This document shows positions 34,246 through 57,335 of a stretch of DNA of 64,000 bases, in pieces; positions within the stretch are counted from its first letter, which is position 1; each line of letters starts with the position of its first letter. The stretch is from Octopus bimaculoides. Lineage: Eukaryota. The position numbers and the translations under genes are program-made. The DNA is taken from assembly GCF_001194135.2 (NCBI RefSeq), contig NC_068982.1, forward strand, positions 188,568,516 to 188,632,515, read 5' to 3'. The notes below the pieces were generated by a model. It saw nothing but the letters and a program-made list of their open reading frames with translations. It was not told the origin of the DNA and did no database searches.

Positions 34246-34289
34246 CTAATAACAACAACAATAATAATAATAATTATAATAACAATTTC

Positions 34290-36973: not shown

Positions 36974-37613
36974 AGGCACACATAGCACCTGCCTTTCTGG
37001 TCTCTGCTGCTGAAGAGGAGATAACCACCCTGAAATGCATGCATCCCACAGTCTGGATAGAAGACACTCTGGATGGATTCAGTGTATTTCCACCCATTTG
37101 TCTGCAGTGAGAAATGTTCTCACTAACAAAATACAGGGAATAGCTTTCTGATGAGTTTGACTATGCCCCTAAGCATATTTGAACTGGTAACTAGTGTGTA
37201 TGTACTGATATATATATATAGGGATGGATGTGTGGTAGGAAGCTTGCTAGCTAGCCACATGGTTCCAAGTTCAGTCCCACTGAGTGGCATATAGGACAAG
37301 TGTCTCTACTCTAGCCTCAAGCCAACCAAAGCCTTGTGAGTGAGTGGATTTGGGAGACAGTAATTAAAAGAAGCCGATTATGAACACACACACACATATA
37401 TATATATATATATGGGGGGTGGGGAGGGGTGTTCCCCACCTCCGCTTCACAACCACTGTTGATTCATGTCCTTGTAACTTAGCGGTTCAATGAAAGAGAC
37501 AGACAGGATAGGTATCAGGGTTAAAAAAGTACTAGGATTAGTTCGTTTGACTGAAAATTCCACAAGGCAGTGCTCCAGCATGGTCACAGTCTAATGAGTA
37601 CACACACACACAT

Positions 37614-39040: not shown

Positions 39041-40615
39041 TTCTCCTTGGAATGAGACAGAAGTTGTTTCCTGTTTGTTTACAGTATTTATTGCACCTGA
39101 ACATCAAAACAAAAAATAGTTAAAATATCTTTTTTAGTATATAATGGTGGCAAGTTTTACATCATCTGAAAGGTCATTAGTTGAACTATTAGTCCTCTTG
39201 CATTCTGGGAGCGTTTGAGTGACATTAGGCCTTAACAAGTGTCCATAAATTAAATGCATCTATCTGGGCCACGATCGTGGCCTGTTGCACTTTTTGTGTT
39301 AACTGTGTCTTAATGTAGATAATGTTTTAACATCCCCGCACCCTCCACCCCATGGTTTGCACTGGTAAATACCAAATATCTGCTGTTGAAACAACTGTCA
39401 AATTGTGAAATGTATGTGGGGGGGAGGGAGATTTTGCTGACACAGACTACCACTAGTTTTCTTATCATCATCATCATCATTAAATGTCTGTTTTCCCATG
39501 CTGGCATGGGTTGGATGGCTTGAGAGGAGTTGGCAACCTGAAGAGCTGTACCAGGCTCCCAGCCTTACCAGCTCCTGTCAAAGAATCCAACCCATGCCAG
39601 CACGGTAAACAGTCGCTAAATGATGAGGATTCTATGGCTGGGTGCCCTTCCTAACACCAACCACTTCAGAGCACAGGTACTTTTTATACGGCACCGGCAC
39701 CAGATACGACTGACCTAAAAGAGATGGGATGAAAGCAGAGAGGTTATGGAGCAAGGAGACAGAACATTGGAGACAGGACATGAATTGGAACTAAAGCAGT
39801 AGTAATTCCACAAGGCAAAGTGGCTGAGTTTCTTTTGAGCCAGCCATGTCATATTGAATCTCCCTGAGAACTACATTAAAAGTATACATGTAGGCGCAGG
39901 AGTGGTTGTGTGGTAAGAAGCTTGCTTACCAACCACATAGTCCTGGGTTCAGTCCCACCATGTGGCACCTTGGGCAAGTGTCTTCTATTATAGCCTCGGG
40001 CCGATGAAGGCCTTGTGAGTGGATTTGGTAGACAGAAACTGAAAGAAGCCTGTCGTATANNNNNNNNNNNNNNNNNNNNNNNNNNNNNNNNNNNNNNNNN
40101 NNNNNNNNNNNNNNNNNNNNNNNNNNNNNNNNNNNNNNNNNNNNNNNNNNNNNNNNNNNNNNNNNNNNNNNNATATATATGTGTGTGTGTGTGTGTGTGT
40201 GTTTGTTTTCCCCCCCAACATTACTTGGTGTGTTTACATCCCCGTAACTTAGTGGTTTGGCAAAAGATTCCCATAGAATAGGCCACTGAAACAAGTAGAA
40301 GGAAAAAAAAAAAGAATGTCTGTGGATCGCTCAGCCACTTGCACATTAAGTCCATGAACAGGCTGTTCTGTTGATCAGATCAACTGGAACTCCTCATAAC
40401 CAACGGAGAGCCAGTTAAGGATCAAATGAACAGATTAGAAATTGTTCAGGGAGCACCAGAACTAAGAAAAAACAAGGAAACACTACCTTGTGTGTTGTTG
40501 GATGGGATAGAAAGAAGAGAATTAGGAAAATGAAGTGGTTTATGTTGTAAGTAAAAAAAGATTTCATTTCATGAAGTTTACAATGTATATAGGTCATTTA
40601 TACCTATCTCTGATA

Positions 40616-40651
<36 letters not shown>

Positions 40652-41038
40652 AAGCAAGTCAGCACATTTCACTTTTGATCAGGATGAAAACAAACTAAAA
40701 ATAAAACCTCACACAAACTCACCGATTTAGCAGCAGAGACCAGTACAGGGGATGAGAAACAACCAGCTTAAGGAGAAGGGAAAGTGGGACAGCTGGTGTG
40801 TTGTGTATAAATTCATTGTATGTACTGTATACACCCTAATCAATTGCTGTCATAGATAAGTCAAACGATGACAACAACTGACAGGCTGAAGTAAGAGACA
40901 AATGAGAAAAAAAAAAAAAGAGAATGTTTTCTTTTTGTTTTTGCTTTTTAATTGCTTGTATAAACACAAGTATTGATTATTTTCGTTTGACCTTCATATT
41001 TTCTCAGGAAAGCTGGTGACGTGAATAGATTTACTTTT

Positions 41039-41685
41039 GTAGTAAAGATTGTTTGCCAACATAACATGGTAGTCCTGGTTTAGGACGAATGTTGCTGTAA
41101 TTTAGCCCCAGGAGACATCATCTCCAGCTGGCTATACAACACGATCTGTGTCCTTATATTTTCGAACAAAGATCGTGTTGTATAGCCAGCTGGAGACAAT
41201 GTCTCCTGGGGTTAAATTACAGCAACATTCATCCTAAACCAGGACTGCCATGTTATGTTGGCAAATAATCTCTACTCCAAAGTACTGTTGCTGAATATCT
41301 CACGTTGTGGGATTTAAAAATAGTAATTTTCTAATTTATAGATTAGTGACTAGTTGTCACTTTGAAAATTATATATTTTGAACAAGAATTTGTCAGCACC
41401 ACCTCTAGGCGAACAATTATTCTGTGTTGATGAAGGGAAATAACCCGGAAATCGAGATGCACAGATATTGTTTTTGAGCTGAGTGGGGTTACTAGATGCC
41501 CTTGTTCAAAAATATAAGGACACAGATCATGTCATATAGCCAGCTGGGGACGATGTCTCCTGGGGCTAAATTACAGCAACATTCGTCCTAAACTAGGACT
41601 GCCATGTTATGTTGGCAAATAATCTTTATTCCACAGTACTGTTGCTGAATATCTCTCATTGTGAGATTTGCAAATAGTAGTTTTC
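41039..41685. mobile_element. Family B element: inverted 5' piece plus ~1.5 tandem copies of a ~353-bp monomer
   Basis: 12-bp TSD agatttactttt (41027-41038, 41686-41697). agatcgtg... at ~41170 recurs at ~41523. Confidence 0.85.
41421..41465 (+). ncRNA. Family B hammerhead-like motif (degenerate copy)
   Basis: TCTGTG-TTGATGA-A-GGG-aaataa-CCC-G-GAA-ATCGAGAT-G-CACAGA. Other copies supply C3 (CTGATGA) and the A at the cleavage site. Confidence 0.5.
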
Positions 41686-41776
41686 AGATTTACTTTTATT
41701 TGTTCAGAATGGAGAGCTTTAGGGTTTTATAATATTTTAAACATTCAGTTAACAACAAAAGTTATCTTTTACAGAA

Positions 41777-41810
<34 letters not shown>

Positions 41811-42019
41811 GGAATTTTACAGGTTATTCGTGTGAAGTATTTTGTAGGGGAAAAACTGAATGACAATGAGGAATGAGTGATTAAAACAGACAAGCAGGTA
41901 TCATCATTGCTTTAATGTCCACTTTTCCTTGCTAGCATGGGTTGGATGGTTTGACAGGAGCTGCTTTGGCATAGTTTCTAGAGCTGGATGCCATTCCTAA
42001 CACCAACCGCTTTACACAG

Positions 42020-42365
42020 TGTACAGGGTAGGGGGGGGCTCTGAAAGGGGTCTCAGGGAGTAGCATCCCTGCCCTCCTGAGCTAGATTCCCACCACATTT
42101 CTTAAAAATCGTGGCAAAGGCCTTGGTCTCAGGACCACCCATGTCTAGAAACTGAGACTGGGGGTAAGCAAGGGCATGCTCCCTGTAGAAAATCCAGCTC
42201 CAAAAATGCCTCATGATAGCAAAGGAGAGTGGGCACCAGCCAACTCAAAGGTTGGGGTGGGCTGCACCTGCCAACCTTGGTTGCTATGGCGTTGAGGTAG
42301 ATCCAGCCATCCCCACCCCCGTTAACAGGGACAAAACCTGGATTTAAAACACTTGATGATGACGA
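42020..42365 (+). mobile_element. GC-rich 3' end of a second, divergent RTE-like family
   Basis: ggggtaagcaagggcatgctccctgtagaaaa parallels the main family motif and ends in (gat)n. Confidence 0.45.
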
Positions 42366-45274
42366 CAGGATGTTTATATATGTTATACTTCAGGTTGGTC
42401 ATTCCTTTCTTTTTTTTTTCTTGTCAAATAAACACACGCATAACATATTCGTTCTTTACTTCAGATTTATTACTATTCCATGTCCTTTGTCTGGAAATCT
42501 TTCATCACACATCCTGTGACCTCTTCAGCAGCTCTCCATCCCATGTATCTCCCCTTGTTCTGTTTAGTTCATTCTATCTATCATGCAGTTCAAGATGCAA
42601 TTTATTGATGAACCACAATCTGTTTCAAGTAATGAAATGGTTTGTGCTGTACATTAAGTTCACACCTGCCATCAAACTGACATCGCTTCCATGGGTCAAA
42701 GTGATCACAGAGCAACAGAACACAACACACCACTCAGTACAGGAATTGAAACCTCAATGTCATGATTACGAATGCAACAGCCCAGTGTATGTGTGTGTGT
42801 ACACACACAGACACAATGGGCTTCTTTCAGTTTCCATCCACCAAATCCACTCAAGACTTTGGGTGGCCCTGGCCTTTTACTAGGCAGTGGAATTGAACTT
42901 GAGACCATTGGGAAGTAAACACAGTCATTCATTGCCTGCAGACATGGCTGTGTGGTTGATTAACAGAACAACACTGAGGAAACCTTTGTACATTGATTCA
43001 GCCTGCTAGAAAAAAATACCAAACCTGCCTCTCGTCTTACCCTACTGATTTAAAACAGCAAAAACAAAAAATTAAAAAACAGGAAAATGTAGTCTTAGAG
43101 ACATTACAAGACTATATGATTGAAGCAAGGGAGTCGTAAGCAGGTTGGTATCAAAAGAGTTAAGATCTTAAGGGTAATCTTTCTATCCAACTTAATGCAG
43201 ATGTTTTAATCAATTTCTGACTTGGATAACATGTTATCATCATCATTTAAAGTTGGTTTTCCTTGTTGGCATGGGTTGGATGGTTTGACAGGAGCTGGTT
43301 AGGCCAGGGCCCACACCAGATTCCAATTGTCTGCTTTGACAGGTTTCTATGGCTGCATGTCCTTAATGCCAGCGTCTTTACAGAGTGTACTGGGTACCTT
43401 TTCACATGGCACCAGCACAGGGGCTCTTTTATGTGATGCCAGCACAGTTGTTTTCCTGCATGGCACTATCATAGGTGCTATCTCATGCGACACCGATGTG
43501 GATGTTGTCTCATGTGGCATGGACACAGGTGCAATTTTATGCGGCGCCGACAGGTGCTATTCTACATGGTGCCAACACTGGTGCCATTCTACATGGCACT
43601 GACATGGGTGCCTTTTACCTGGTGCCAGCACAAGATCAATGATGACAAGGAGGATTATTATTTCTATAGCTAAAATCCCTTCCTACTGCAACAGACTCAA
43701 CTGGAGAGGGGTCCCGTTGTTAATTAAGCAGACTGAGTCTGTCAGAGTTATGTATTTCAGGACACACTGGTGTTAGCAGTAGGGTTTCAAATCATATGTC
43801 CAGCAGTCCAGTAATCTCACTGCAATCATGCATTGTATCAATAATCTATAAAGGTGGTTCTATAAACAATAACTTCAAAACTTTGGTTATGATAACAGAC
43901 TTGCTAATAAGCAATCAATTAAGAAAACCTAAGCCGAGACTAATCAGGTGAGGACAAAAATCACAGGTGAGAGAGAAAGTAAATAATGATGCTTGGGAAA
44001 GTTTTTAAAGTTTATCCAGCAAGTGTCTGATCTTTTACTTGTCGCAGTCATTAGACGGTGGCCATGCTGGGGCACTGCCTTGAAGAATTTAGTAGAAAGA
44101 ATCACACACACACACCACCCCCGTACTTTTTTTATTATTATTTTTAGAGCCTGGCACTTATTCTACCAGTTTCTTTTGCTGAATCGCTATGCTATCAGGG
44201 ACAGACATACCAATACACCAATACCAGTTGTCAAGCAGTGTGGGTGGGGGTCTTCCCCACCCCACACACATATACATATATAGATATATACAACCGGCTT
44301 CCTTCAGTTTCTGTCTACCAAATCTACTCATCAGGCTTTGGTTGGCCAGAGGCTATAGAAGACGGCACTTGCCGAAGGTGCCTTGCAGTGCCGCCTGACT
44401 GGCTCTCATGCTGGTGGCACGTAAAAAGCACCCACTACACTCTCAGAGTGGTTGGCGTAAGGAAGGGCATCCAGTTGTAGAAACATTGTCAGATCAGACT
44501 GGAGCCTGATGTGGCCTTCTGGCTTGCCAGTCCCCAGTCAAACCATCCAACCCATGCCAGCATGGAAAACAGATGGTAAATGATGATGATGATGATGATA
44601 GAAAATAGAGCCTGGTGTGGCCCCCAGCCGTACCAGCTCCTGTCAAACTGTCCAATCCATGCCAGCATGGAAAACAGACATCAAATGCTGATGATGATAG
44701 GTAGGGCTGCATGGTTAAAAAAGCCTGCTGCTCTTGATCATGTGGTCCTAGGTTCAATCCTATACTGCAGCACCTTGGAATAAAGGTCTTCTACAGCCCC
44801 AAGCCATCATCATCATTTAGCATTTATATCCCGTGCTGGCATGGGTTAGACAGTTTGACTGTAACTGGTATGCTGGTACCAGGTGTTTTTTACGTGTTGC
44901 CAGCACAGGTGCCCTCCATGAGCCACCAGCACGAGCGCCCTCCGCGGGCCACCAGCACAGGCACTCTCTACGTGTCACCAGCAGTGGTCACAACTATGAT
45001 TTTACTTGACACATCTTCTCAAGCACACCAAATCACCAAAAATCTAAGCATTTCCAGTTTTCCCTAAAAAAACATGTCTGGCTATTGCTTTGTTTGGAAA
45101 TGTGAGGGTTGGTGACAGGAATGGCATCCAACCATAGAATATTTGTCTCAACAAATTCAATATAAAAAAATCCTGTCAAAGATCTAGGTTTGCCCTATAC
45201 TCACATGGGTCTGGCCTAAATCTTGGACAAAATTCTCTGTATTGCTATATTCAGATCTTTTCTGTTGCTGTCAC

Positions 45275-45600
45275 ATCATCGTTTACCATCTGTTTTCCAT
45301 GCTGGCATGGGTTGGACGGTTTGACTGGAGACTGGCAAGCTAGGAGGCCACACCAGGCTTCAATCTGATTTGGCAGTGTTTCTACAGCTGGATGCCCTTC
45401 CTAATGCCAACCACTCTGAGAGTGTAGTGGGTGCTTTTTATGTGCCACCGGCACAGGGAGCCAGTCAGGCGGATCTGGCAGCAACCCATGCATGAATGGT
45501 GCTTATTGCGTGCCACCAGCACTGGCAACAGCAACAACTACAATTTCCATTTGATTTGATTTACGTGACTCAATAAGTCTCCTCAAGCACGGCATGTCAC
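45275..45600 (-). mobile_element. RTE 3' tail; representative of many short copies (also ~1145-1330, 9510-9750, 11395-11560, 16215-16360, 19790-20040, 20750-20886, 22185-22460, 26850-27130, 29330-29535, 39470-39720, 43240-43640, 44390-45020, 47750-48060, 61160-61400, 61925-62215)
   Basis: Shared (cat)n-gtttaacgtccgttttccatgctggcatgggttgg...ctggatgcccttcctaatgccaaccac motif. Coordinates approximate. Confidence 0.8.
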
Positions 45601-46131
45601 ACATTTTGAAATTTTCAAATTAAGTGAAAATTTTCAAATTTGGTACATTGATGTAATTTTTCACATTCAATCCAATTTTGTGAATCATTTATTTTGGAAA
45701 AAATTTAGAAAAATGTTAGAGAGATTTAAAGTTTGATCATTTTTACCCAATCAGAAAACAAGATTTGAAAGTTGGCATTTTCTGCGTGATTACTGTCTAT
45801 CACAAAATAGTAAAAATGTTACAACAATGTTGAAACAAAGTGAAAGCAAAACATTACACCAAAAGTTGTAAGAAATTTTAATGTATAAAATGAAATAAAT
45901 ATTTTAAAAAGGGAAAAAAAAAATTGTCAAATTTCTTTGCAAAAAATTACAAAAAACGGTATATTAGGGTTAGAGTTTGACTCCTCATGAAAGAAAATAC
46001 AACACCAATGTGTCTGTGGTTTTTGGTTGGCTAAAATAATCCAAAATGTGCAGACTTTAAAAGCTATTAACTTTTTATTTTCAATTTATGGCATAAATGA
46101 TTTTCATTTTCATAATTAGTTTACAAAACTA

Positions 46132-47395
46132 TTGGGTTGGCAACTAAGTTCCCACTTAAATTCTGGAATTTATTGTGTTTTTAAATTTTGGAATCTATTT
46201 TTTTCGAGAATTCTATTTTTAAATCATTTTGGAATCTTTTTTTTTTTTTCCTAGTTAATTTTAGTTTATTTTCAGATCATTAAAATGAAATGTCAAGTTA
46301 AGAAAAACGAGCATTTTTTGCTTTTTATCAAGGTTCTAAGGCCTCAAAGCTGCTCGCGCCATTTGTGCTGTGTATGGAGAGGGTGCCATAGCTGAAAGAA
46401 CCACTCGTTATCGGTATGCCAAGTTCAAAAATGGAAATTTTGACCTCAAAGACTGACCTCGTTCCAGCCATCCAGTTGAGTTCGATGAAGAGCGATTAAA
46501 CCAACTTTTGCACAAAATTTCTCGTCAAATGACAAGGGAACTGGCAGAGAAAATGGAATGCTCGCACACTGCTATAGAGAAGCATCTTCAATCGATGGGA
46601 AAGGTTCAGAAGTATGGAGCATGGGTTCCGCATGCTTTAAGTGACAACAACAAAAATCAACGAGCCACAATCTCCGCTGGTTTGCTTCCTCGTCACTGCT
46701 CAACTCATGGACACAAAGAGCAATTTCTTTACCGAATCGTTACTGGCAACGAAAAATGGTGCCTATACATCAATATGAACCAATGTAAGGAATGGCTTAG
46801 CCCTGGTAAACAAGCGACACCGCGCGTGAAACAAGATCTTCATCCGCGTAAAACGATGTTGTGCGTATGGTGGGACTGTGAAGGGATTATCCATTATGAA
46901 TTGCTTGAACAGAACCAAACGGTCAACGCGGAACTCTATGTTCAATAGATGGAACGTCTCAACACGGCTATTCAAGAGAAAAGGCCTAATCGGCAGCATG
47001 AAGTTTTTCTGCTGTACGACAACGCCCGCCCTCATATCATCAATATGACCAAAGAAGCCATTCAAACGCATGGCTGGGAAGTGCTGCCACACCCGCCGTA
47101 CTCTCCTAATTTGGCACCAATGGATTTTCACCTCTTTCGATCTCTTTCAAATGCTATGCACGGAGTTTCGTTCAATACTGATGCAGAATTGAGAGCTTGG
47201 TTGGATCAATTTCTCAAGTCAAAATCGGGTGATTTCTACCAACGAGGTACTGAAAATCTTGTTGAACGTTGGGAAGAAGTCGTAAACAACAAAGGTGAAT
47301 ACATTATTGATTAATTGTTTGTTATTTTTTATTAAACCTTTTGAAAAAATTTCAATAAAAAAAAAAAAACCGTGTGAATGTAGTTGCCAACCCAA
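46132..47395 (+). mobile_element. Full-length decayed mariner (DD34D) DNA transposon
   Basis: TA duplications (46130-31, 47396-97), inverted ends TTGGGTTGGCAACTA / TAGTTGCCAACCCAA, 1,264 bp, internal transposase. Confidence 0.95.
46285..47314 (+). pseudogene. Mariner transposase pseudogene
   Basis: WVPHAL, VTGNEKW (first catalytic D changed to N), YDNARPH and YSPNLAPMDF motifs. N-terminal frameshift, an in-frame TGA after FDLKD, and TAG at 46946-46948. Confidence 0.93.
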
Positions 47396-47605
47396 TAAAT
47401 GGGTAAATTAAACTTGAAAATGACTGGAACAGAATTGGAAAAAAACAGAAAACTGCGACAGCAACAGAAAAGATTCCTATATTCTAACAACAGGTGATAG
47501 CATTTTACCAACATCAGATTGGTCCTCTATCACATGCACTAACTATTGCAGTTGTTGACATGCAGTTGCATCTTCTGTTGCAGAAAATGAAGTAAATACT
47601 CTTAC

Positions 47606-47704
47606 CTTTTGAACAAAGTAAAACTTTCCTAGGATGTGTGCATCATTTTCATTAGATTCCAACAGAGTGATGTGGATATAAACATTGTGTAGCTCGCATA
47701 AAAT
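47606..47704 (-). CDS. TBC1D15: TBC1D15 coding exon 2 (ILCELHNVYIHITLLESNENDAHILGKFYFVQK)
   Basis: Acceptor ttccatttgtag, donor gtaaga, 99 nt. Resembles human IIYEQEGVYIH...GILRVLEK. Confidence 0.85.
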
Positions 47705-48855
47705 CTACAAATGGAAAATAGAAGAAAACTGATTTTAAATGAAATCAAGACCATCATCATCATTTAACGTCTGCCTTCCATGCTGGCATGGGTGGGATGG
47801 TTTCACAAGAGCCAGCCAGGCAGAAGCCTGCACCAGACTTCTGTGATTGTTTTGGCAGGGCTTTTACAGCTGGATGCCCTTCCTAACACCAACCACTCAG
47901 CAGAGTGGACTTAGTGCTTTTTATATGGCACAAGCACAGGTGAGGTCAGCTTTGGTGAGGTTTTTACATCTGGATGCCCTTCCAAACACAAACCATTTTA
48001 CAGTGTAGACTGGGTGCCTTTTAAGTGGCACCTGCACTGACTGGGTTACCAAGTACCTTGTAAGGTAAAAAAGAAAACTCTTTTGAGAGGGGAGGGGGCA
48101 TTGGAGGAGGTGCTTTTCTGTCGGATGATGAAAGATTATAGAGAGACAGAGTGACAGAAACAGGTGTCTTGCTGTAGAGGAGGTATAAGGTTATTTGGCC
48201 GGAGAGAGAGAGAGAGAGAGAAGTTTTATGAATGTTCATTTAATAAAATATGAAATAAAAGCTGTTGATGACAATAACTTTGCTGTAGTTATTAATGATG
48301 ATCCTGAATGAACAAATGGACCTCATTTCTTATATATACATCCAGCAAAATCAATAGGAGATGAACAGATATAGTTCGATATTTGAACTGAATGAAATCA
48401 ATAAGAAATGTACAGCATGATGAAGCAAGCATTTAACAGAATCAATACAGAGTCTTATCTTGAACCGTTAGTTACTCTTGTATTTATTAAAAAGGGCCAA
48501 ATGGCACAACAGTGCCTTAGGAATAAGGGGCATAATCTACTCTGGGGTTCTGATATGGTGGATGTTGTAAGACAAGTCATGTCCTGAATTGTTCTGTTCA
48601 TGCAGGTTTTGTCAACAGAAAAGAAAATAAAAGACCTCAAAGCATTCAATATTGTGTACCCATAATGTGCTTAAAGCAATTACTTTTGAAATCCCTGAAG
48701 TTTGAGGCCCTGTAATACAACAATTTTGATCTCCCTAAGATTAAAAAAAAATACACTCCAGAATTGTCAGACATGCTTCAATTTTTCTAAAATTGAATAA
48801 AATAAATAAAATAATGATGAATAAACACATGCACATGAAGAACAAAATTAATGTA

Positions 48856-49808
48856 CCTTGAGAGACAAGTTGGACCTAAGAAACATCAGTTGTGGTGTGC
48901 AAGAGAGACGATTGCGCTGGTATGGTCATATGGCGAGAATGGATGAGGATAGCTGTGTGAAAAAGTGCCACACCCTCGCGGTTGAGGGAACCTGTGGAAG
49001 AGGTAGACGCAGGAAGATCTGGGATGAGGTGGTGAAGCACGACCTTTGAACATTGGGCCTCACCAAGGCAATGACTAGTGACTGAGACCTTTGGAGATAT
49101 GGTGTGCTTGAGAAGACCCGGCAAGCCAAGTGAGACCATAATCCAAGGCCTCTGCCAGGGGTGTAGCCAGCCCACTTATGCGTACCTTCCCTTCATTGGA
49201 CACTAAACCCTGTTTGTGAAGACCTGTTGAGGCAAGTGAAATCGATCCACATTTGACGACTAGCACCCATACCAACCTCTCCTTTCATTGGACACTAAAC
49301 TTGGCCTGCAAAGACCTGTTGGGGCAAGTGAAATTGAAATCGTAATTGAACCAAATTTGATGACTGGCACCTGTGCCAGTGGAGCACTAAGAGCACCATC
49401 CGAGAGTGATCATTGCCAGAGCAGCTGTCTGGTTTCCACGCCAGTGGCACGTAAATAGTACCATTTGAGCGTGATCGTTACCAGCGTTGCCTTACTGGCA
49501 CGTGAAAAGTCATTCAAGCGAGGTCGTTGCCAGTGCTGCTGAACTGGCTCCTATGCAGGTGGCATGTAAAAAACACCATTTTGAGCGTAGCCGTTGTCAG
49601 TATCACCTGACAGGCCTTCGTGCCGGTGGCACGTAAAAGCACCCACTACACTCTCGGAGGGGTTGGCGTTAGAAAGGGCATCCAGCTGTAGAAACTCTGC
49701 CAAATCAGATTGGAGCCTGGTGTAGCCATCTGGTTTGCCAGTCCTCAGTCAAATTGTCCAACCCATGCCAGCATGGAAAGCGGACGTTAAACGATGATGA
49801 TGATGATG
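48856..49808 (+). mobile_element. RTE LINE 3' fragment
   Basis: CGVQERRLRWYGHMARMDEDSCVKKCHTLAVEGTCGRGR, then 3' UTR and (GAT)n. Confidence 0.88.
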
Positions 49809-49849
49809 AACATAATATACATAAAATGTCAAATGTCTGCTGCATAACG

Positions 49850-50752
49850 TTTGGCTCATCATCATCATGCTGGCATGGGATGGATGGTTTCACTGAAAAC
49901 TAGTAAGCCATGGTCTGCACCAGGTTCCAATGCAAACTGGCAATGCTTCTACAATTGGATGCCCTTCCTAACGCCAACCACTCCGAGAGTGCAGTGGGTG
50001 CTTTTTATGTGTCGCTGGCATGGTTGCCAATAACCTGACACCAGCATCAGCCATTACTACGGTCTCACTTGGCTTGGCAGGTCAACATAAGCATGGTTTA
50101 TTGCCAAGGGTCTTGGTAACCGGTCACTGTCTTCACGAGACCCAACACTTGAATGGTGCTTTTTACGTGGCACAGGTGAGAGTCACAACTACAATTTCAC
50201 TCGGTTCAACAGGTCTTCGCAAGCACAGCATATCACCCAATGGCTGGTCTTTTCCCATCATTTTCATATATGTGTGTACACACACACACATATTATTTAT
50301 ATTATATATATATATATATATATATCGAAACTGAACCAAATTTGATGGCTGGCACCCATGCCAGTGGAGCACTAACAGCACCATCCGAGTGGGATCACTG
50401 CCAGAGCAGCGATCTCGCTTCTGTGCTGGTGGAACATAAAAAGCACCATTTGAGCGCCATCGTTTCCAGCTTCGCCTTACTGGCACTTGTGCCGGTGGCA
50501 TGTGAACAAAACATTGGACTGACGCCTGTGCAGGTGGCACGTAAAAAACACCATTTGAGCGTGGCCGTTGCCAGTACCGCTGGACCGGCCCTCGTGCCGG
50601 TGGCACATAATAAGCACCCACTAGACACTCAGAGTGGTTGGTGTTAGGAAGGGCATCCAGCTGTAGAAACTGCCAAATCAGATTGGAGCCTGGTGTAGCC
50701 ATCTAGTTCACCAGTCTCCAGGCATGGAAAGTGGACGTTAAATGATGATGAT
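49850..50752. mobile_element. Cluster of RTE 3' UTR pieces (minus pieces, then a plus piece)
   Basis: Minus-strand tail fragments at ~49850-50240, (TA)n, then a plus-strand 3' UTR at ~50330-50752. Confidence 0.75.
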
Positions 50753-51052
50753 ATACATTGTTATTTAAAGGCCATCTTCCACACTGGCATCAGTTGGGTG
50801 GTTTGACTGGTTCCAGCCAGTGTAAAGACTGCATCATACTTCACTGTGGCAGTTTCTATGACTGGATGTCCTTAAAGCTAACCACTTTACGACATGTATT
50901 GGGTGCTTTTTACATGGTAACAGCACAAGTGGGGTCACCATACAGTTTGCAAAACTAAGGTCCCTTTCAAATGTGCGGGGCCACAGTCGAGAGGGAGGCA
51001 ACTTCAGTAGAAAATATTTTACTTCTCATAGAACTATATTGACTATTTACAC

Positions 51053-51371
51053 CAGGGGTTCCCAACCTTATTTTGCGTGTGGACCCCCTGAGAGCTATCT
51101 TATTATCTGTGGACCCCATATATGCACATGTAAATTTTTGAAATAAAATATTTGTTTGTGGGTTAATAAAAACTAACAACAAAACAATTTCGTTAAATTC
51201 ATAACATAAATTCCAAAGACAAATCGTGAAAATTTCAATATAATACAAGAACCTCTCCTAGGAAACAAAATTTTTGTATGGACCCACAAATTACAATTTG
51301 TTACACGTGGACCCCCTTAAAACTTCTGTGAACCCCTGTGGGTTCATGTAGACTCCGGTTGGAAACCCCTG
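51053..51371. mobile_element. hAT-type MITE
   Basis: TIR CAGGGGTTCCCAACC / GGTTGGAAACCCCTG with exact 8-bp TSD atttacac. Confidence 0.88.
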
Positions 51372-51909
51372 ATTTACACAGAAGACTTAATTATAGCAAG
51401 GAAGTGTAGAACCAGCCACATGTTTTGGAGAAACTGACAATAGAAAAATGGTGTACTTTGTGTCTTACTCCTACAGCAATAAGGAATTTCTAAGTCCGCA
51501 TACTAATAATGATCTCTTGAATTTGCCACCAGGGCGAAAACTAATAATGCTAACTAATCCTTAATCCCACGGTCAGTTCGTCTATTTCTTTGATAGGTGT
51601 TATTTGGATCCTTCAGAGATCCCAGAACCTTCTTTACGAGGTTAACCGGTTGGAGTGATGGTTTAGTCACCAACGATTGTTATGGCTTTACATGCTGCAT
51701 CCCGCAAATACACACACGCGGCTAAGAATTATGACTAATCAAATTTAAGAATCATTACTCAAAAATTTGACTTTAATTTCATAAATAGACAGACAAGAAT
51801 ATTATATTCCAACTCGCCATTCAAAGAAATGGCTTCGTAGTGGCAGAGGTACCTACACAACGCTAGACTAATAAATCATTCGGGTTTGTTCAATCATATC
51901 TAGTATACA

Positions 51910-52140
51910 GGCGGCGAGCTGGCAGAATCGTTAGCACGCCGGGCGAAATGCCTAGCGGTATTTCGTCTTCTGTTACGTTCTGAGTTCAAATTCCGCCGAG
52001 GTCGACTTTGCCTTTCATCCTTTCGAGGTCGATAAATTAAGTACCAGTTACGCACTGGGGTCGATGTAATCGACTTAATCTCTTTGTCTGTCCTTGTTTG
52101 TCCCCTCTATGTTTAGCCCCTTGTGGGCAATAAAGAAATA
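51910..52140 (+). mobile_element. tRNA-derived SINE with a Deu/Nin-like central domain (near-consensus copy)
   Basis: A box TGGCAGAATCG, B box GAGTTCAAATTCC, central gtcgactttgcctttcatcctttcgaggtcgataaa, tail aataaagaaata. Further copies at 25732-25967 (+), ~32590-32800 (-), ~33200-33440 (-), ~3240-3400 (+), ~58325-58450 (+). Confidence 0.8.
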
Positions 52141-54570
52141 ATATATAGTATACAGATGATAAATTAGGTAGTGACCTCGTGCCAGAGAGAGAGCAAACGG
52201 AAAACCATTGTATTACAGAAAACACAAACATCCGGAAATCAAAATAAATATTACAAAATGATGAGTAATCGACAATTTTAACAGTTGTTACGCAATTTTT
52301 GCTGGGTAATAAAAATTTCCTAAGAAGCTGTTTATTAAGGGCTGAAAATGTTTTAGATATACCATGTACTAATACATTATTACAATATTTATATATTTAG
52401 TCAATATCTGCGTGTTAAACATTCAGGCTGATCCCTTTGCTAAGAGTTGCAAAAGTTTCTTAAAATTAAGTTGGAACCAGCACCAGGATTCTAAACATTA
52501 ATACTCGATATAGAGACCTTAATTTTGTGTAACTAATTCATTCAGATTAGAAATAAACTACGAAAACGGTTACCGGTACAGTGTCTTTTGTATCTCAACA
52601 CACAGGACAAAATATCACCCAACGCCCTCATTGCCCGTTTTACGTCCGACCTACAGGGGCCCCGCCCAAACCACTTTTCCCATTTCTTCAGTCTCGGAAC
52701 GTTACCTACCAGGTTCGTTTCTTGCAGTTGTTCGAGTTGACGACTATCGTCGATAGCCTCTGACAGATTCATCTCAGGTGAAAGGAAATAAATTGAAAGA
52801 TGATAGCAAATTTCGTTTTATTTAACAGAAACGAAAAAGAAAAAAAGGATACGAAAACATTTCCCATGATTTCACTTTTACGTTTTCGAAGTGTTGTGTT
52901 AAAGAATTTTTTTTCTATGTCGTAGTAAATGTCAATGTTTCGAAGATGACTCCAAAATTAGTGTAGCATCTACTTCCTGTCTTGTTAAGGAAGCGAATGT
53001 TGATAAACTAAAACTGTCAGAATGAAAAAAAAAAGTAAACAGTCCCAAAGAGAATAAAGATTTAACCCCAGTTAGCCCTTTTTGTAAATATTAAACATTA
53101 AGGACTACTTTGTCCTTTGAGAAGAGTAACTTTTTGGAGATATGGCCACTATTTCTAACAAACAGGTCCAGCAACCGCGTAGAAAGAGGTTATGGTCAGT
53201 GGTAGACAATTACAGGAATAATTAACCAGACCAGTAGATTAGTTGTACGTTTGAAATAATAATACAGTTTCTGTAATTACTATGTCCAGCAATCGCTTAT
53301 CCAACGTTACCAGGTAATAAAGAGTAAAACAAAGGCAGAACAATTATTAGCGTAGAAAAGCCAGCGGTTTATTGAATTGAGAGAGAATAGGCTACAGCAA
53401 ACATACATTTAAAACAAAGGGTTTATTGTATATGAAATACAGAAGACTGCTTAACTACGAAGTTAGGTGGTACGGGGAAAATCTTGTCATTTTTGTTAAA
53501 ATGCTTACTTAAAGAAGTTTGTTGTTGCTATTTGAAATTGCCAACTCCATAAATAATAACGAATAATTCACACACACCTGCTGCATGAAGATTTCTCCCA
53601 GCTTCTACTTTGAATGATTCATTAGATCTCAGAAAAAAGTATTTGTTCAAAAGAACTTCAGAAAACTAGGTTATCTAATATTCATTAAATGAACAAGCAT
53701 ATATTTTACGTTGAAAGGTTTAAGATGGATTTCTAATACTAAGCGAAGTTAAATTCTTGTTAAGACCTGTATTAAAGACATATATATGGTTTATAAACCT
53801 CTTACAAAAGCTTAAACTCCAGTTATGAATCACATCTATTATATAGATAATTAGGCTATCGTAGAGGCCTTGTGCTGGAGAGATGAAAATAATCGTTAGT
53901 CTATTACAAATAATACACAAATTAAGAAAATATTAAATAAAATGAGTAACCAATACGTCATTCTCTTTTCACCTCGTAAAACACTTGACAGTTTTCAGTC
54001 ATTTTTGTTGAGTAATAAAATATATAATAATTCAAAAATGTAATTGTTATATGTGACATAGTTTTAAATATATCCGGTACAAATACAAAATTAGTCTAGA
54101 GACAATATAGAAATATTTCACATACATACCAGAAATATCAATGAAACCAGCCTCAATGAAGACTTAATTCATACATTGAAAACCCTTAGATTTGCCAGCA
54201 AACTTTTGGAAAGATATATCGAACCCAAATTTTGACTTTAACAATACGTGTATTGTCATTAATGTTTCTTCTTCTTTTCAGGGGGTGGAGGTCTCCTTGA
54301 AAGTAAATAATCAACACGTGTGTTGCGTGGCAAAGCAAGCGGGACTTTGCACGCAAGACGTAAACTGTTGTTGTAATAATGCAAGTAGCAAGGTACTTTA
54401 TTGATTAGTAATATTGTTTTGATAAATGAATTACTTGGCATACGCTGACGTGTTCTACGTCGTCGACAGCATTTGTCACTAATACAGATTCAGTTAAAAG
54501 CACAAAGGGACATGTTTGCCTGTCAGGAAGAACAGACCCCGCCACAAAAACACTGATAACAGAGACTTAC

Positions 54571-54588
54571 CTTATCCGAAGATGCCAT
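54571..54588 (-). CDS. TBC1D15: TBC1D15 coding exon 1 (MASSDK)
   Basis: caatATGGCATCTTCGGATAAG|gtaagt. Phase 0 donor matches the next exon; vertebrate exon 1 is likewise a short peptide ending in K. Confidence 0.75.
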
Positions 54589-56099
54589 ATTGCTAGAACA
54601 GGCAACTGATTAGATGGGAGGAGGATGCAGTAGAGTGTTGTGAGAGGGGGAGGGGGGATTGGTTTACGTTGTAAGCGACCTTCATCCGAAAGTAATGCTG
54701 TGTTGCTTGTCTCTTTTTAGCGTAAGATAGGTTTCGCTCTGATTTACATAAAATACTCATAAAAATTAATTATAGAATTAATTATTAATACACGTTACAG
54801 AATTAAACGATAATTCATAAATATATATATATGTGTATGTGTGTGTATATGGGGTAATCTTGACCGAAAGCGGCGTCAATTAAAATGATGGGGAATCTAC
54901 AAAACTGATATGGCTATTTACATGATGGAATGAAAGGACGAAGAAATTGTTGCATATTTTCGAAATTTATTTATTGTTCATTACAGTGTGTAATAAATAT
55001 TTATTTACTTCTTGTAGGGATAAATATACGTTTCCATTCATAAATTTCTCTTTCAAAAACTTTTAAGCAAATAATCGCTAAAATTATAACTTTTTGAATG
55101 AACTATTTTTTCTATGGAAGAAATCTTCTTTTCAACAATGCTAACTTAATAAATTAACCAACCAATAGTGCTGAGAAACGAAAGGAATAATCTATAAAAA
55201 AAAAAGAAGCCTAATAAAAAGCGTTAATTTGATTCGTTTCAGTCATTCGAGAAAACCAAGTTTTTTTATCCTCCCCCCATTATTCTTGGCTTTCACTTCA
55301 ATTGCTGCCGACTTCGTTCAAAGCTATTTGTGTGTGTGTGCGTGCGTGTTAGTTAATGAGCCATTAGTAAGGAAAGAATTTAATATTTTGATAAAACGTT
55401 TTAGATGAGAAAAGAAATATAAAATCGTCTCTGATATATTTCCCAATGTCATGAGACTAAAGATTATCGGGCTGACTGTTGTATTTTTATATTACCTAAG
55501 CGGCTAAACATTTTAAAATATATATTTTAGGTATGGTGGCACGAACAGGAGAAATAAAACTCATTACGCAAAAGCGTAGCATATATATATTTTTTTATTG
55601 CTGTTTTATCTAAGCTTCACACATACACAATAAAAACCGAATAATTCTATTATTTTTTATTAATTTCCTTTTCATCTCGCCCCCCCCCCAAGCTGTCCTC
55701 GTGACTGATGACGTCATCGGACCAGCCATTGTACTTGTTGTCGTCTGTCACAGTTTTCATCTTCCATGGTCTCTCTCTCTCTGGCTGTCCTTCCTCCTCT
55801 ACTCTAATGTAGTGTAGTAAACTCTATATTGCTTCCAACACTACTAACATTTCTCCAGACCGTCGCTGCCACCAGACAAGCAACCAACAAGCCCAAACAA
55901 CCTGTTTATTTCCTTGCTCTTCTCTGTCACTTACGCAACATTACTCTTATGATGGCCATTCGGATTATCACCACTTAACTCCTTCCACCGATGTTTTGCT
56001 TTCATCCATTCATGGTTTGCGTGTTCTGAATACAAACACGTCCTTCTCTAAGCCCACTCAGTCATTATACAACCCCAACAGTCAAAACATCTCAGCAAA

Positions 56100-56134
<35 letters not shown>

Positions 56135-56308
56135 AAATACCAACACAGACACACACCAGGTTAAAGATACCAACAACCAGCAACACTCAGTCACGCACAC
56201 AACTTGCCCAATATTTCACCATTACATACACACACTCACAATATACCAATAATATAATATATATATACGTATTTCTGAGCTGTCTAGTTCTCCTATTGAG
56301 GAGGCACC
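54589..56308. promoter_or_regulatory. Putative shared (bidirectional) promoter/5' UTR region of TBC1D15 and RAB21
   Basis: 1,720 bp between divergent start codons. Richer in CpG than the introns and lacks the SINE/LINE copies seen elsewhere. TSS positions unknown. Confidence 0.6.
55707..55718. promoter_or_regulatory. Perfect CRE/ATF-type palindrome GATGACGTCATC
   Basis: TGACGTCA core extended to a 12-bp palindrome between the two start codons. Function inferred only. Confidence 0.45.
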
Positions 56309-56464
56309 ATGGCCAACAGTGGCCTTGTTGGAGGACATGCAAGTGCGTCTCATAACTATTCTTTCAAGATTGTTTTGTTAGGCGAGGGTTGTGTAGGCAA
56401 AACCTCTTTGATTCTTCGTTACGTTGAGAACAAATTTAACGACAAACACTTCTCGACATTACAG
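56309..56464 (+). CDS. RAB21: RAB21 small GTPase, coding exon 1 (MANSGLVGGHASASHNYSFKIVLLGEGCVGKTSLILRYVENKFNDKHFSTLQ)
   Basis: Kozak gcaccATGG, P-loop GEGCVGKTS and ENKFNDKH..TLQ typical of Rab21; donor CAG|gtaagc. Not present in the supplied ORF track. Confidence 0.93.
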
Positions 56465-56539
56465 GTAAGCTAACACACCTCTACTTTATTATTGTTCGTT
56501 TTTTTTTTCGATTATCATGATGTTTTTTTTCTTCATTTT

Positions 56540-57335
56540 AGTAATTAACTCCTTGTTTAGCCCCTGGTCAAAAGGCCTATGGTATTAAAGAAACATTCTA
56601 GCTGTGACAATCCCATTTTTTTTTTTAAAGACGGATTATATCATACATAATTAAGTAGGACCATGTTATTTAATATGCCCTTCCTGTTCACCCCACTCCC
56701 ACCCAAAAACATCCCATAGGGTGTGATATGAGGAGATTTGGCTGCTATATTTAGCGGTCAGAGTAACACGGTAGAAGCTTTCTCGTTGGATCGTCAATGG
56801 CTGTTGTTTAGCTGTAGATCCACTACTATGAAACAGACCTATGATCAAGGATATTCCGGACGTGACCATCCTATGTTAATAGCTGTGGGGAGTACGACAT
56901 TTGCTACTAATGTATCCTTGTTTTATATAAGACGATAGGGTACGATTTGGCTGCTATTTTTAGCAAAGCAGCACAAGGCTTCATTGGATCGTCAATGGCT
57001 GTTGCTTTATCGCATGAAACCGACTTAGGATCAAAAGTATTCCATATGTGACCATCCTGTCTTTGATGCTTGAAGGACTAAAATTAGCCAATAATATGTC
57101 CTTCGCAAAACGGTAGGGTGTAATTTGAGGGAGATTTGGCATGTATATCTAGCAATTAGACGCTTATTCGTTGGATCGTTAATGGCTGTTGCTTCACCAC
57201 AGGTCAACTTTCGTGAAACAAGACCTATGATAAGAGGTGTTCGAGATGTGACCATCCTATGTTTTTAAATGGGCGGAAGGCTGCAACATAAGCTATTATC
57301 TGATGGGGGGATTAAGCTGCTATTTCTAGCAAGAG
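56540..57335 (-). repeat. Degenerate tandem array (~190-200 bp unit, ~4 units) in RAB21 intron 1
   Basis: ttggatcgt(c/t)aatggctgttg recurs at ~56787, ~56985 and ~57171; gtgaccatcct and gatttggctgctat recur once per unit. Confidence 0.75.

What the first reader, a model, noticed from the sequence alone, without database searches (positions are those of the whole stretch)
54571..56464. RAB21 and a TBC1D15/17 Rab-GAP sit head-to-head, 1.7 kb apart
Seen: divergent start codons 1,720 bp apart, separated by transposon-free DNA. Known (from memory): RAB21 and TBC1D15 are also neighbours on human 12q21, although in tandem orientation. TBC1D15 is a Rab7 GAP, and its paralogue TBC1D17 has been reported to act on Rab21. 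Octopus genomes are noted for scrambled ancestral gene linkage. Inference: an ancient Rab/GAP gene pair kept together, here possibly co-regulated from one promoter.
Basis: partly seen in the sequence, partly recalled or inferred. Interest (0 to 1): 0.7.

Follow-up and report, generated by a model that had tools for sequence, protein, structure and literature searches.

The report
Conserved head-to-head Rab21/TBC1D15 gene pair
In this octopus sequence the genes for the trafficking switch Rab21 and the Rab-inactivating protein TBC1D15/17 start back-to-back 1.7 kb apart, an arrangement also found in an argonaut, a limpet and an annelid worm, so it is an old gene pair of a known kind that probably shares promoter DNA.

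Summary
Rab21 coding exon 1 lies at 56309-56464 (+). A complete 17-exon TBC1D15/17 gene runs from 54588 to 623 (-). The start codons diverge across exactly 1,720 bp.

The spacer lies in the longest repeat-free stretch of a window that is 33% repeat, and it keeps its CpGs.

The same head-to-head layout occurs in Octopus sinensis (1,776 bp), Argonauta (~3 kb), the limpet Lottia (450 bp) and the annelid Owenia (369 bp). No other neighbour is shared among the three non-Octopus loci.

It was not found next to Rab21 in a starfish or an acorn worm. It was also not found within 10 kb upstream of TBC1D15 in amphioxus, a spider or gar.

One 62-64-nt block with a palindromic CRE (TGACGTCA) is conserved between octopus and Argonauta. 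Its 15-mer core recurs once, in the same orientation, in the Lottia spacer.

Best reading: an ancient divergent pair, at least lophotrochozoan and probably bilaterian, held together by shared or interleaved promoter DNA. Transcription start sites and co-expression remain untested, and the Rab21/GAP functional link is weak in the literature.

It is a new member of a known kind. Interest is moderate.

The parts
56309..56464 (+). Rab21 coding exon 1 (52 aa: N-terminus, P-loop GEGCVGKT, start of switch I). The donor GT follows at 56465.
   Evidence: PDB Rab21 scores 63.7 bits against 34.5 for the next Rab. 51/52 identical to O. vulgaris Rab21 P0324. Pfam Ras E 8.8e-9.
54589..56308 (.). Divergent spacer between the two start codons (1,720 bp). 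No intra-window repeats, no Rfam or tRNA hit, only short microsatellites.
   Evidence: CpG o/e is 0.84 against 0.41 for the whole window.
54571..54588 (-). TBC1D15/17 first coding exon (MASSDK), followed by donor GTAAGT.
   Evidence: The identical exon lies at L010 10001 in O. sinensis. It is conserved in Argonauta.
623..54588 (-). Complete TBC1D15/17 coding region in 17 exons: 54588-54571, 47704-47606, 35575-35461, 34245-34032, 30391-30280, 29954-~29906, ~23953-23786 (5' end cut by assembly gap 23955-23964), 17513-17454, 11894-11766, 11165-11062, 8498-8404, 7221-7105, 5782-5682, 3684-3585, 2265-2168, 1798-1682, 889-623 (stop included).
   Evidence: 631/658 identical to O. sinensis isoform X3, with GT at every chosen donor and AG at every chosen acceptor (the script only considered GT/GC and AG sites, and the exon 6/7 junction at the assembly gap is wrong). 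Pfam PH_RBD 48 bits plus RabGAP-TBC 157 bits. PDB TBC1D15 470 bits, TBC1D17 411 bits, next TBC family 62 bits.
7105..7221 (-). Exon carrying the arginine-finger motif IxxDxxR (I-EKDVSR-TDR).
   Evidence: The motif definition is from PMC13090580.
5682..5782 (-). Exon carrying the glutamine-finger motif YxQ (YVQGMSD).
55689..55750 (.). Deeply conserved spacer block, 594 nt from the Rab21 ATG and 1,111 nt from the TBC1D15 ATG.
   Evidence: 86% identity over 64 nt to Argonauta L001 9045-8982, E 1e-15; four-species alignment; score 43.5 against a null maximum of 25.
55707..55718 (.). 12-bp perfect palindrome GATGACGTCATC containing the full CRE/ATF site TGACGTCA (55709-55716).
   Evidence: The same full site lies inside the block in O. 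sinensis and Argonauta. In Lottia the block has ACGTCA, and a separate ATGACGTCAT lies 100 bp from the TBC ATG.
55700..55714 (-). 15-mer ACGTCAYCRGTCACG. It is unique in the window, in both other cephalopod loci and in the Lottia locus, and each time it lies in the Rab21-TBC1D15 spacer in the same orientation.
   Evidence: With up to one mismatch allowed, none of 100 shuffles of the 26-kb Lottia locus gave a match, and one of 100 shuffles of the window did.
54610..54680 (-). Proximal region upstream of the TBC1D15 ATG conserved in three cephalopods: GGTCGCTTA(N2)ACGT (54680-54666), CCAAT (54662-54658, Octopus only), then a pyrimidine tract ending CAG|TTGCC 20 nt before the ATG. This is either a proximal promoter or a 3' splice acceptor of a 5'UTR intron.
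52151..56716 (.). Longest repeat-free stretch of the window. It overlaps a CpG-undepleted domain (about 52250-55750, o/e 0.63-1.55, mostly above 0.8).
54299..54449 (.). Second block conserved with Argonauta, inside TBC1D15 intron 1 (contains CACGTG). Possibly a promoter-proximal or alternative 5' exon element.
   Evidence: 68% over 152 nt, E 1e-9.

Best explanation
This is an ancient divergently transcribed gene pair. Rab21 is an endosomal Rab GTPase. Its partner is the single invertebrate pro-orthologue of vertebrate TBC1D15 and TBC1D17, a catalytically intact Rab GAP with an N-terminal Rab-binding domain.

Shown:
- The 5'-to-5' arrangement dates at least to the common ancestor of molluscs and annelids.
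- In compact genomes the start codons are only 369-450 bp apart, so the two promoters must overlap there.
- In octopus the spacer has grown to 1.7 kb. It has stayed free of the repeats that fill the surroundings, it keeps its CpGs, and it retains one deeply conserved block with a palindromic CRE/ATF site.

Inferred:
- The pair is held together because any breakpoint or insertion in the shared or interleaved promoter would damage one or both genes.
- The CRE block is the core of that promoter. Rab21 is transcribed rightward from it. TBC1D15 is transcribed leftward either from it (through a non-coding first exon and a ~0.9-1 kb 5'UTR intron) or from a separate proximal module about 60-90 nt upstream of its ATG.
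- The tandem adjacency in tetrapods is the same ancestral linkage after inversion of RAB21. Ambulacrarians, and probably amphioxus, arthropods and teleosts, lost it.

Not established: that the GAP acts on Rab21.
For: Gene identities.

Head-to-head with DNA in hand:
- O. sinensis L010: Rab21 ATG at 8224, TBC ATG at 10001.
- Argonauta L001.
- Lottia L002: 450 bp.
- Owenia L003: 369 bp.

Other linkage evidence:
- Consecutive locus tags in Sinanodonta (ACJMK2_030276/030277) and Pomacea (C0Q70_11256/11257).
- No other neighbour is shared among Argonauta, Lottia and Owenia, so the constraint is on the pair itself.

Spacer properties: repeat-free and CpG-undepleted.

Conserved elements: the CRE block and the unique 15-mer shared with Lottia in the same orientation.

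Vertebrates: rab21 and tbc1d15 are listed among the genes near tph2 in tetrapods (PMC6470480).

General precedent: conserved ancestral microsyntenic pairs are enriched for 5'-5' orientation and short spacers (Irimia 2012, PMC3514665).
Against: - No transcript, CAGE or expression data were available. Start sites and co-expression in octopus are inferred.
- The ATG-to-ATG distance (1.72 kb) exceeds the usual 1-kb definition of a bidirectional promoter.
- A second conserved module next to the TBC ATG fits two separate promoters about 1.1 kb apart equally well.
- The block sits 0.6 kb from the Rab21 ATG in Octopus but 2 kb from it in Argonauta.
- Owenia lacks the CRE block.
- The Lottia-octopus similarity is not significant by local-alignment score and only P about 0.01 by longest common substring.
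- The pair is absent in Asterias and Saccoglossus. It was not seen within 10 kb in amphioxus, spider or gar.
- Plakobranchus has the two genes listed on scaffolds of different length.
- The human tandem orientation rests on memory.
Confidence: 0.7

Rival explanations
1. There are two independent promoters, and the adjacency is retained passively. The ancestral spacer was so short that few rearrangement breakpoints could fall in it without killing a gene. The pair therefore persists without shared regulation or any functional relation. In octopus the two promoters are now separate modules about 1.1 kb apart.
For: Spacers of 369-450 bp in Lottia and Owenia. A distinct conserved proximal module with CCAAT near the TBC ATG in addition to the CRE block nearer Rab21. 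Saccoglossus Rab21 is head-to-head with a different gene, TSG101-like, 693 bp away, so Rab21's promoter tolerates other partners.
Against: After the spacer expanded to 1.7-3 kb in cephalopods, whose genomes are heavily rearranged (from memory, not tested here) and repeat-rich (33% of this window), the target was no longer small. Yet the pair and a repeat-free spacer persist.
Confidence: 0.2
2. The pair is kept together by selection for coordinated dosage of a Rab and its own regulator. TBC1D15/17 would be the physiological GAP of Rab21, or would bind Rab21-GTP through its Rab-binding domain as an effector while inactivating Rab7.
For: TBC1D17 stimulated Rab21 GTP hydrolysis in vitro (Fuchs 2007, PMC2064371). 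No validated RAB21 GAP exists (bioRxiv 10.64898/2026.01.30.702430). The octopus protein keeps both catalytic fingers and the PH_RBD domain. The pair alone, and not the surrounding genes, is conserved.
Against: TBC1D17 was more active on Rab35 and acted on many Rabs, and RAB21 depletion did not copy its Shiga-toxin phenotype. A Drosophila RAB21 modifier screen that included Tbc1d15-17 RNAi lines reported TBC1D25 instead. The genes are separated in starfish and acorn worm with no sign of gene loss. Many conserved head-to-head pairs are functionally unrelated (PMC3514665).
Confidence: 0.2
3. The lophotrochozoan head-to-head pair and the tetrapod tandem neighbours arose independently. The pair would then be a lophotrochozoan innovation, not a bilaterian one.
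For: No adjacency in Asterias or Saccoglossus, and none seen within 10 kb in amphioxus, spider or gar. The orientation differs in tetrapods (memory). Teleosts lack rab21 near tbc1d15/tph2 (PMC6470480).
Against: Two specific genes becoming immediate neighbours twice by chance has odds of roughly 1 in 10,000 for a genome of about 20,000 genes (my estimate), whereas loss of adjacency is common. Ptychodera lists both genes with the same 53-Mb contig length.
Confidence: 0.2

Closest known systems
Conserved ancestral microsyntenic pairs (CAMPs) of the co-regulated, 5'-5' type (Irimia et al. 2012, PMC3514665), e.g. HSPE1-HSPD1 with a shared bidirectional promoter
   Same: Two non-homologous genes in divergent orientation. 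They are adjacent across phyla while surrounding genes differ, with very short spacers in compact genomes and conserved spacer sequence.
   Different: Whether this pair is in the published CAMP list could not be checked, because no supplement is held. The octopus spacer is 1.7 kb, start sites are unknown and co-expression is untested. The pair is missing in the ambulacrarians examined.
Human RAB21-TBC1D15 neighbourhood at 12q21 (with TPH2 downstream)
   Same: The same two orthologous genes, listed among the genes near tph2 in tetrapods (PMC6470480). Gar keeps TBC1D15 followed by a biopterin-dependent hydroxylase gene that I take to be TPH2.
   Different: In human the genes are in tandem, not divergent, with tens of kb between them (from memory, not tested here). 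A shared core promoter is therefore not possible there.
Vertebrate TBC1D15 (Rab7 GAP) and TBC1D17
   Same: PH_RBD plus TBC architecture, IxxDxxR and YxQ fingers. 470 and 411 bits to the solved TBC1D15 and TBC1D17 domains.
   Different: The octopus gene is treated here as a pre-duplication pro-orthologue of both. That rests on the Drosophila name Tbc1d15-17; no tree was built. Its substrate is unknown.
CRE/ATF-driven TATA-less bidirectional promoters
   Same: A perfect palindromic TGACGTCA sits in the only deeply conserved spacer block. A palindrome can serve both directions.
   Different: No binding or activity data exist. Owenia uses other motifs (ATGGCG, TCTCGCGAGA).

Membership tests
Rab21 subfamily of Rab GTPases | Ras/Rab G-domain with P-loop GxxxxGK[ST] | tested here: met
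   GEGCVGKT is in exon 1. Pfam Ras E 8.8e-9 on the 52 residues.
Rab21 subfamily of Rab GTPases | Closer to Rab21 than to any other Rab | tested here: met
   PDB Rab21 63.7 bits against Rab9A 34.5 and Rab5 about 30. 51/52 identical to annotated O. vulgaris Rab21.
Rab21 subfamily of Rab GTPases | Complete gene with switch II, G4/G5 and C-terminal prenylation cysteines | not testable with these tools
   Only exon 1 is in the window. The O. vulgaris orthologue is a full 215 aa ending in GCC.
TBC1D15/TBC1D17 Rab GAPs | TBC domain with arginine finger (IxxDxxR) and glutamine finger (YxQ) | tested here: met
   IEKDVSRTDR and YVQ are present. RabGAP-TBC scores 156.8 bits.
TBC1D15/TBC1D17 Rab GAPs | N-terminal Rab-binding domain (PH_RBD), found only in TBC1D15/17 and SGSM1/2 among TBC GAPs (PMC13090580) | tested here: met
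   PF12068 48.2 bits at residues 12-177 of the window-derived protein.
TBC1D15/TBC1D17 Rab GAPs | Closest to TBC1D15/17 among TBC families | tested here: met
   470/455 bits (TBC1D15) and 411/401 bits (TBC1D17), against 62 bits for the next family. The top 120 database hits are named TBC1D15 wherever a source gives a family name.
TBC1D15/TBC1D17 Rab GAPs | GAP activity on a defined Rab (Rab7 for TBC1D15) | not testable with these tools
   Needs a biochemical assay.
Bidirectional-promoter (head-to-head) gene pair | Divergent 5'-5' orientation with no gene between | tested here: met
   The same layout is seen in four other species.
Bidirectional-promoter (head-to-head) gene pair | Transcription start sites less than 1 kb apart | not testable with these tools
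   ATGs are 1,720 bp apart in the window and no transcript data were available. The condition is necessarily met in Lottia (450 bp) and Owenia (369 bp).
Bidirectional-promoter (head-to-head) gene pair | Correlated expression of the two genes | not testable with these tools
   No expression data.
Conserved ancestral microsyntenic pair (Irimia 2012) | Adjacency conserved across distant phyla | tested here: met
   Mollusca (Cephalopoda, Gastropoda; Bivalvia by locus tags) and Annelida. For tetrapods the literature only places both genes near tph2.
Conserved ancestral microsyntenic pair (Irimia 2012) | Present on both sides of the protostome/deuterostome split in invertebrate lineages | tested here: not met
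   Absent in Asterias and Saccoglossus. Not seen within 10 kb in amphioxus. Only the tetrapod evidence supports the deuterostome side.

The most novel reading that the evidence does not exclude
The Rab21-TBC1D15/17 pair is a bilaterian-ancestral regulatory unit. A CRE-containing bidirectional promoter more than 500 million years old has been preserved because TBC1D15/17 is the long-sought physiological partner of Rab21. It would be either Rab21's GAP, or a Rab21-GTP effector (through the Rab-binding domain) that switches off Rab7. On this view genomic context identifies a Rab-GAP circuit that biochemical screens have missed.
Probability: 0.15. Interest if true: 0.7.

Novelty: new member of a known kind. 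Interest (0 to 1): 0.45.

Why it matters
Deeply conserved head-to-head pairs are rare markers of regulatory constraint, and octopus genomes have lost most ancestral gene order. A pair that survives there, with a spacer kept clear of repeats and a promoter motif shared with a limpet, is a clean case for studying how bidirectional promoters evolve when a genome expands.

It also gives an independent, genome-context reason to test TBC1D15/17 against Rab21. According to a 2026 preprint, Rab21 still has no validated GAP.

On its own it does not change any established view. The kind of arrangement is well described.

Tried and rejected
- Searching the protein database with only the 52-aa Rab21 exon returned fragments of 38-91 aa that were useless for synteny. 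A 167-aa Owenia-derived query was used instead.
- Two contig look-ups failed because the isoform given was not the one on record. The cluster listing gave the longest isoforms, which worked.
- For Ptychodera no DNA was returned, because the gene model spans 200 kb.
- Window against O. sinensis is about 89% identical throughout the spacer, too close for footprinting. Argonauta was informative.
- Smith-Waterman scores between the Lottia or Owenia spacers and the cephalopod spacers were not above AT-rich shuffles. The longest-common-substring test gave P about 0.01 for Lottia against O. sinensis only. The pattern test carries the claim, with the caveat that the 15-nt sub-block was chosen after inspection.
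- The supplement of Irimia 2012 with the pair list is not held. No paper in the library holds both 'Rab21' and 'microsynteny'.
- Rfam, tRNA and tandem-repeat scans of the spacer found nothing beyond short microsatellites.
- The 180-codon stop-free stretch at 55813-56352 (+) was set aside as non-coding. It is low-complexity CA-rich sequence, with no database search run on it.
- I considered that the 6-codon TBC first exon was a chance ATG. I rejected this because the annotated O. sinensis protein starts MASSDK and the exon plus donor is conserved in Argonauta.
Full report
**What is in the window**

The window is animal DNA with many interspersed repeats and nine N-runs. On the + strand, an ATG at 56309 opens a 52-codon exon that ends at 56464 and is followed by GTAAGC.

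Its product is MANSGLVGGHASASHNYSFKIVLLGEGCVGKTSLILRYVENKFNDKHFSTLQ.
- It matches solved Rab21 structures at 63.7 bits. The next best Rab (Rab9A) scores 34.5 bits and Rab5 about 30.
- It is 51/52 identical to the N-terminus of annotated Octopus vulgaris Rab21. That protein continues ...TLQ|ASCLNKK, so the exon boundary is exact.
- No further Rab21 exon lies between 56465 and 64000, so intron 1 is longer than 7.5 kb.

On the - strand, ATGGCATCTTCGGATAAG|GTAAGT (54588-54571) encodes MASSDK. Octopus sinensis TBC1D15 isoform X3 begins MASSDK|ILCELHNVY..., and the next exon is at 47704-47606.

Spliced alignment recovers 17 coding exons down to the stop at 623. Every chosen junction has a GT donor and an AG acceptor, which is what the script searched for. 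They give an open 650-aa product that is 631/658 identical to the O. sinensis protein. The only defect is at coding exon 7, whose 5' part is cut by the assembly gap at 23955-23964.

The window-derived protein has the following properties.
- Pfam PH_RBD (48 bits) plus RabGAP-TBC (157 bits).
- The IxxDxxR and YxQ catalytic fingers.
- Scores of 470/455 bits to solved TBC1D15 domains and 411/401 bits to TBC1D17, against 62 bits for the next TBC family.

The naming of the single Drosophila gene as Tbc1d15-17 fits a pre-duplication pro-orthologue of both vertebrate genes. I built no tree.

The window is about 96-98% identical to O. sinensis at the protein level and about 89% at the nucleotide level in the spacer. 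It therefore comes from a different Octopus species.

**The observation**

The two start codons diverge, and 54589-56308 between them is exactly 1,720 bp.
- A self-comparison shows that 33% of the window is made of repeats present elsewhere in the window, with up to 34 copies. The spacer has none.
- 52151-56716 is the longest repeat-free stretch: 4,566 bp against a mean of 455 bp over 90 gaps (P about 0.001-0.004 under an exponential model).
- CpG observed/expected is 0.41 for the window, with a median of 0.34 per 500 bp. From about 52250 to 55750 it is 0.63-1.55, mostly above 0.8, at or above the 90th-95th percentile in most of those windows. That is what an unmethylated promoter domain in a methylated genome would look like (inference).
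- Rfam, tRNA and tandem-repeat scans find only short microsatellites.

**Is the pair old?**

I fetched the genomic surroundings of orthologues. Loci are oriented with the queried gene on the + strand and carry flanks of up to 10 kb.

| Species (locus) | Group | Arrangement | Gap between start codons |
|---|---|---|---|
| O. sinensis (L010) | cephalopod | Rab21 ATG 8224 (-), TBC1D15 MASSDK ATG 10001 (+) | 1,776 bp |
| Argonauta hians (L001) | cephalopod | Rab21 exon 1 at 6998-6855 (-), TBC1D15 from 10001 (+) | about 3.0 kb |
| Lottia gigantea (L002) | limpet | Rab21 7040-9550 (-), TBC1D15 from 10001 (+) | 450 bp |
| Owenia fusiformis (L003) | annelid | Rab21 1412-9631 (-), TBC1D15 from 10001 (+) | 369 bp |

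- The two genes carry consecutive locus tags in the bivalve Sinanodonta (ACJMK2_030276/030277) and the snail Pomacea (C0Q70_11256/11257).

No other neighbour is shared between Argonauta (calcipressin downstream), Lottia (TIP_N/G-patch and a glycosyltransferase) and Owenia. What is conserved is the pair, not a larger block.

The arrangement is missing elsewhere.
- In Asterias, Rab21 is flanked by a HIT-domain gene and a SAPS gene.
- In Saccoglossus, Rab21 is head-to-head with a TSG101-like gene 693 bp away.
- No Rab21 exon lies within 10 kb upstream of TBC1D15 in Branchiostoma floridae, the spider Uloborus or the gar. In gar TBC1D15 is followed by a biopterin-dependent hydroxylase gene, which I take to be TPH2.
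- Plakobranchus and a teleost list different contig lengths for the two genes.

The 10-kb flank limit means that 'not seen' is not 'unlinked'.

For vertebrates, a synteny study lists rab21 and tbc1d15 among the genes near tph2 in tetrapods but not teleosts (PMC6470480). The tandem orientation in human is from my memory.

The chance that two given genes become immediate neighbours twice independently is roughly 1 in 10,000 (my estimate). Loss of adjacency is common. I therefore think a bilaterian origin with several losses, and an inversion in vertebrates, is more likely than convergence. Only the lophotrochozoan age is demonstrated.

**The spacer**

Against Argonauta, only four pieces of 54000-57000 align:
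1. Rab21 exon 1.
2. The TBC1D15 ATG exon with about 20 nt upstream.
3. A block in TBC1D15 intron 1 (54299-54449, 68% identity).
4. One spacer block, 55689-55750 (86% over 64 nt, E 1e-15).

The local-alignment score of the two spacers is 43.5 against a shuffle maximum of 25.

The spacer block contains the perfect 12-bp palindrome GATGACGTCATC, which is a full CRE/ATF site (TGACGTCA, 55709-55716).

The 15-mer ACGTCAYCRGTCACG, written from the three cephalopod sequences, behaves as follows.
- It occurs once in the 64-kb window, once in each of the other two cephalopod loci, and once in the 26-kb Lottia locus.
- Each occurrence is inside the Rab21-TBC1D15 spacer, in the same orientation relative to the genes.
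- Allowing up to one mismatch, none of 100 shuffles of the Lottia locus contains it, and one of 100 shuffles of the window does.

Two less targeted tests are weaker. The longest common substring between Lottia and O. sinensis gives P about 0.01, and the Smith-Waterman score is not significant. The sub-block was also chosen after inspection. I therefore call the mollusc-wide conservation of this element likely, not proven.

Owenia lacks the element. Its spacer has ATGGCG and TCTCGCGAGA instead.

| Species | Block to Rab21 ATG | Block to TBC1D15 ATG |
|---|---|---|
| Window | 594 nt | 1,111 nt |
| O. sinensis | 581 nt | 1,180 nt |
| Argonauta | 2,019 nt | 968 nt |
| Lottia | 141 nt | 294 nt |

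(All.)

Close to the TBC1D15 ATG, three cephalopods share GGTCGCTTA(N2)ACGT. Octopus also has a CCAAT box there. A pyrimidine tract then ends in CAG|TTGCC, 20 nt before the ATG. This can be read two ways.
- It is a proximal promoter. The start sites would then be about 1.1 kb apart.
- It is the 3' splice site of a 5'UTR intron. TBC1D15's true first exon would then sit next to the CRE block, giving a genuine bidirectional core promoter.

I cannot decide between these without transcript data.

**Mechanism**

In Lottia and Owenia the two promoters must overlap physically. A breakpoint or insertion there would damage a gene, which is the standard explanation for conserved 5'-5' pairs (PMC3514665).

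In cephalopods the spacer has expanded four- to eight-fold, yet several features persist:
- it is repeat-free;
- it is CpG-rich for its context;
- it is anchored by one conserved palindromic element.

This argues for continuing constraint rather than mere small-target persistence. I put 0.7 on 'ancient divergent pair held by shared or interleaved promoter DNA'. Within that, I put about even odds on a single bidirectional core in octopus.

**The Rab/GAP idea**

The literature link is thin.
- Fuchs et al. 2007 wrote that TBC1D17 'might be a GAP for Rab21' from an in-vitro panel and could not validate it.
- A 2026 preprint states that no GAP has been shown to act directly on RAB21. It notes that TBC1D17 was more active on RAB35. 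It included Tbc1d15-17 RNAi lines in a Drosophila modifier screen that reported TBC1D25.

The conserved pairing is a new, independent hint that deserves an assay. Conserved head-to-head pairs are often functionally unrelated, and the genes have separated in echinoderm and hemichordate lineages without obvious consequence.

**Comparison and novelty**

This is a conserved ancestral microsyntenic pair of the co-regulated 5'-5' type, comparable to HSPE1-HSPD1. I found no paper in the searchable library that describes it. Supplementary pair lists were not available, so it may already be tabulated. I rate it a new member of a known kind, of moderate interest.

**Verdict**

Noticed in passing
window 54299-54449: A block in TBC1D15 intron 1 is conserved with Argonauta (68% over 152 nt, E 1e-9) and contains an E-box CACGTG. 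It may be a promoter-proximal or alternative-exon element.
   Followed up: partly
window 54061-54225 (minus); L010 10440-10487: The alternative first coding exon of O. sinensis isoform X1 (MNQVLIKAGFSIYIFL) maps here. In the window it has TAA at codon 3 plus indels, while the donor CTG|GTATGT is kept. It is probably a non-coding alternative 5' exon or an annotation artefact.
   Followed up: partly
window 23955-23964 (and eight other N-runs, e.g. 37859-38700, 24606-25070): Assembly gaps. The one at 23955-23964 removes the 5' part of TBC1D15 coding exon 7 (about 11 codons, KFIHDPYTTTL).
   Followed up: yes
window, whole; e.g. 26001-28000 and 36001-38000: 33% of the window consists of dispersed repeats with up to 34 copies, which I read as SINE-like without classifying them. 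A reverse-transcriptase-like ORF fragment lies at 38858-39103 (minus) in TBC1D15 intron 2.
   Followed up: no
window about 52250-55750: A CpG-undepleted domain (o/e 0.63-1.55, mostly above 0.8, against a window median of 0.34) covers the 5' part of TBC1D15 intron 1 and most of the spacer. It drops to 0.5-0.65 between the CRE block and the Rab21 ATG.
   Followed up: partly
L008 1-10001 (Saccoglossus kowalevskii): Rab21 is head-to-head with a TSG101-like gene (UEV + Vps23_core) 693 bp away. Rab21 keeps a divergent partner here, but a different endosomal one.
   Followed up: no
L003 about 9760-9815 (Owenia fusiformis): The 369-bp spacer lacks the CRE block. It carries AATATGGCG, which I read as YY1-like, and the palindrome TCTCGCGAGA, which I recall being associated with bidirectional TATA-less promoters in mammals (memory).
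   Followed up: no
L002 9899-9908 (Lottia gigantea): A second, perfect ATGACGTCAT site lies about 100 bp from the TBC1D15 ATG. CGCTTACA follows the 15-mer block within 45 nt, resembling the octopus proximal element GGTCGCTTACA, which lies 1 kb away from the block in octopus. This could mean an ancestral compact promoter was split by insertion, or the match could be chance.
   Followed up: no
L009 20905-44965 (Branchiostoma floridae): Three large LRR/Ig genes are nested on the opposite strand inside introns of amphioxus TBC1D15.
   Followed up: no
literature (PMC12834770): TBC1D15::RAB21 fusion transcripts are reported in human AML. I take this as consistent with the two genes being close neighbours in human, though the report itself was not found to say so.
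   Followed up: no
Bradybaena has two TBC1D15 genes. I suspect lineage-specific duplications, which would let one ask which copy keeps the pairing.
   Followed up: no
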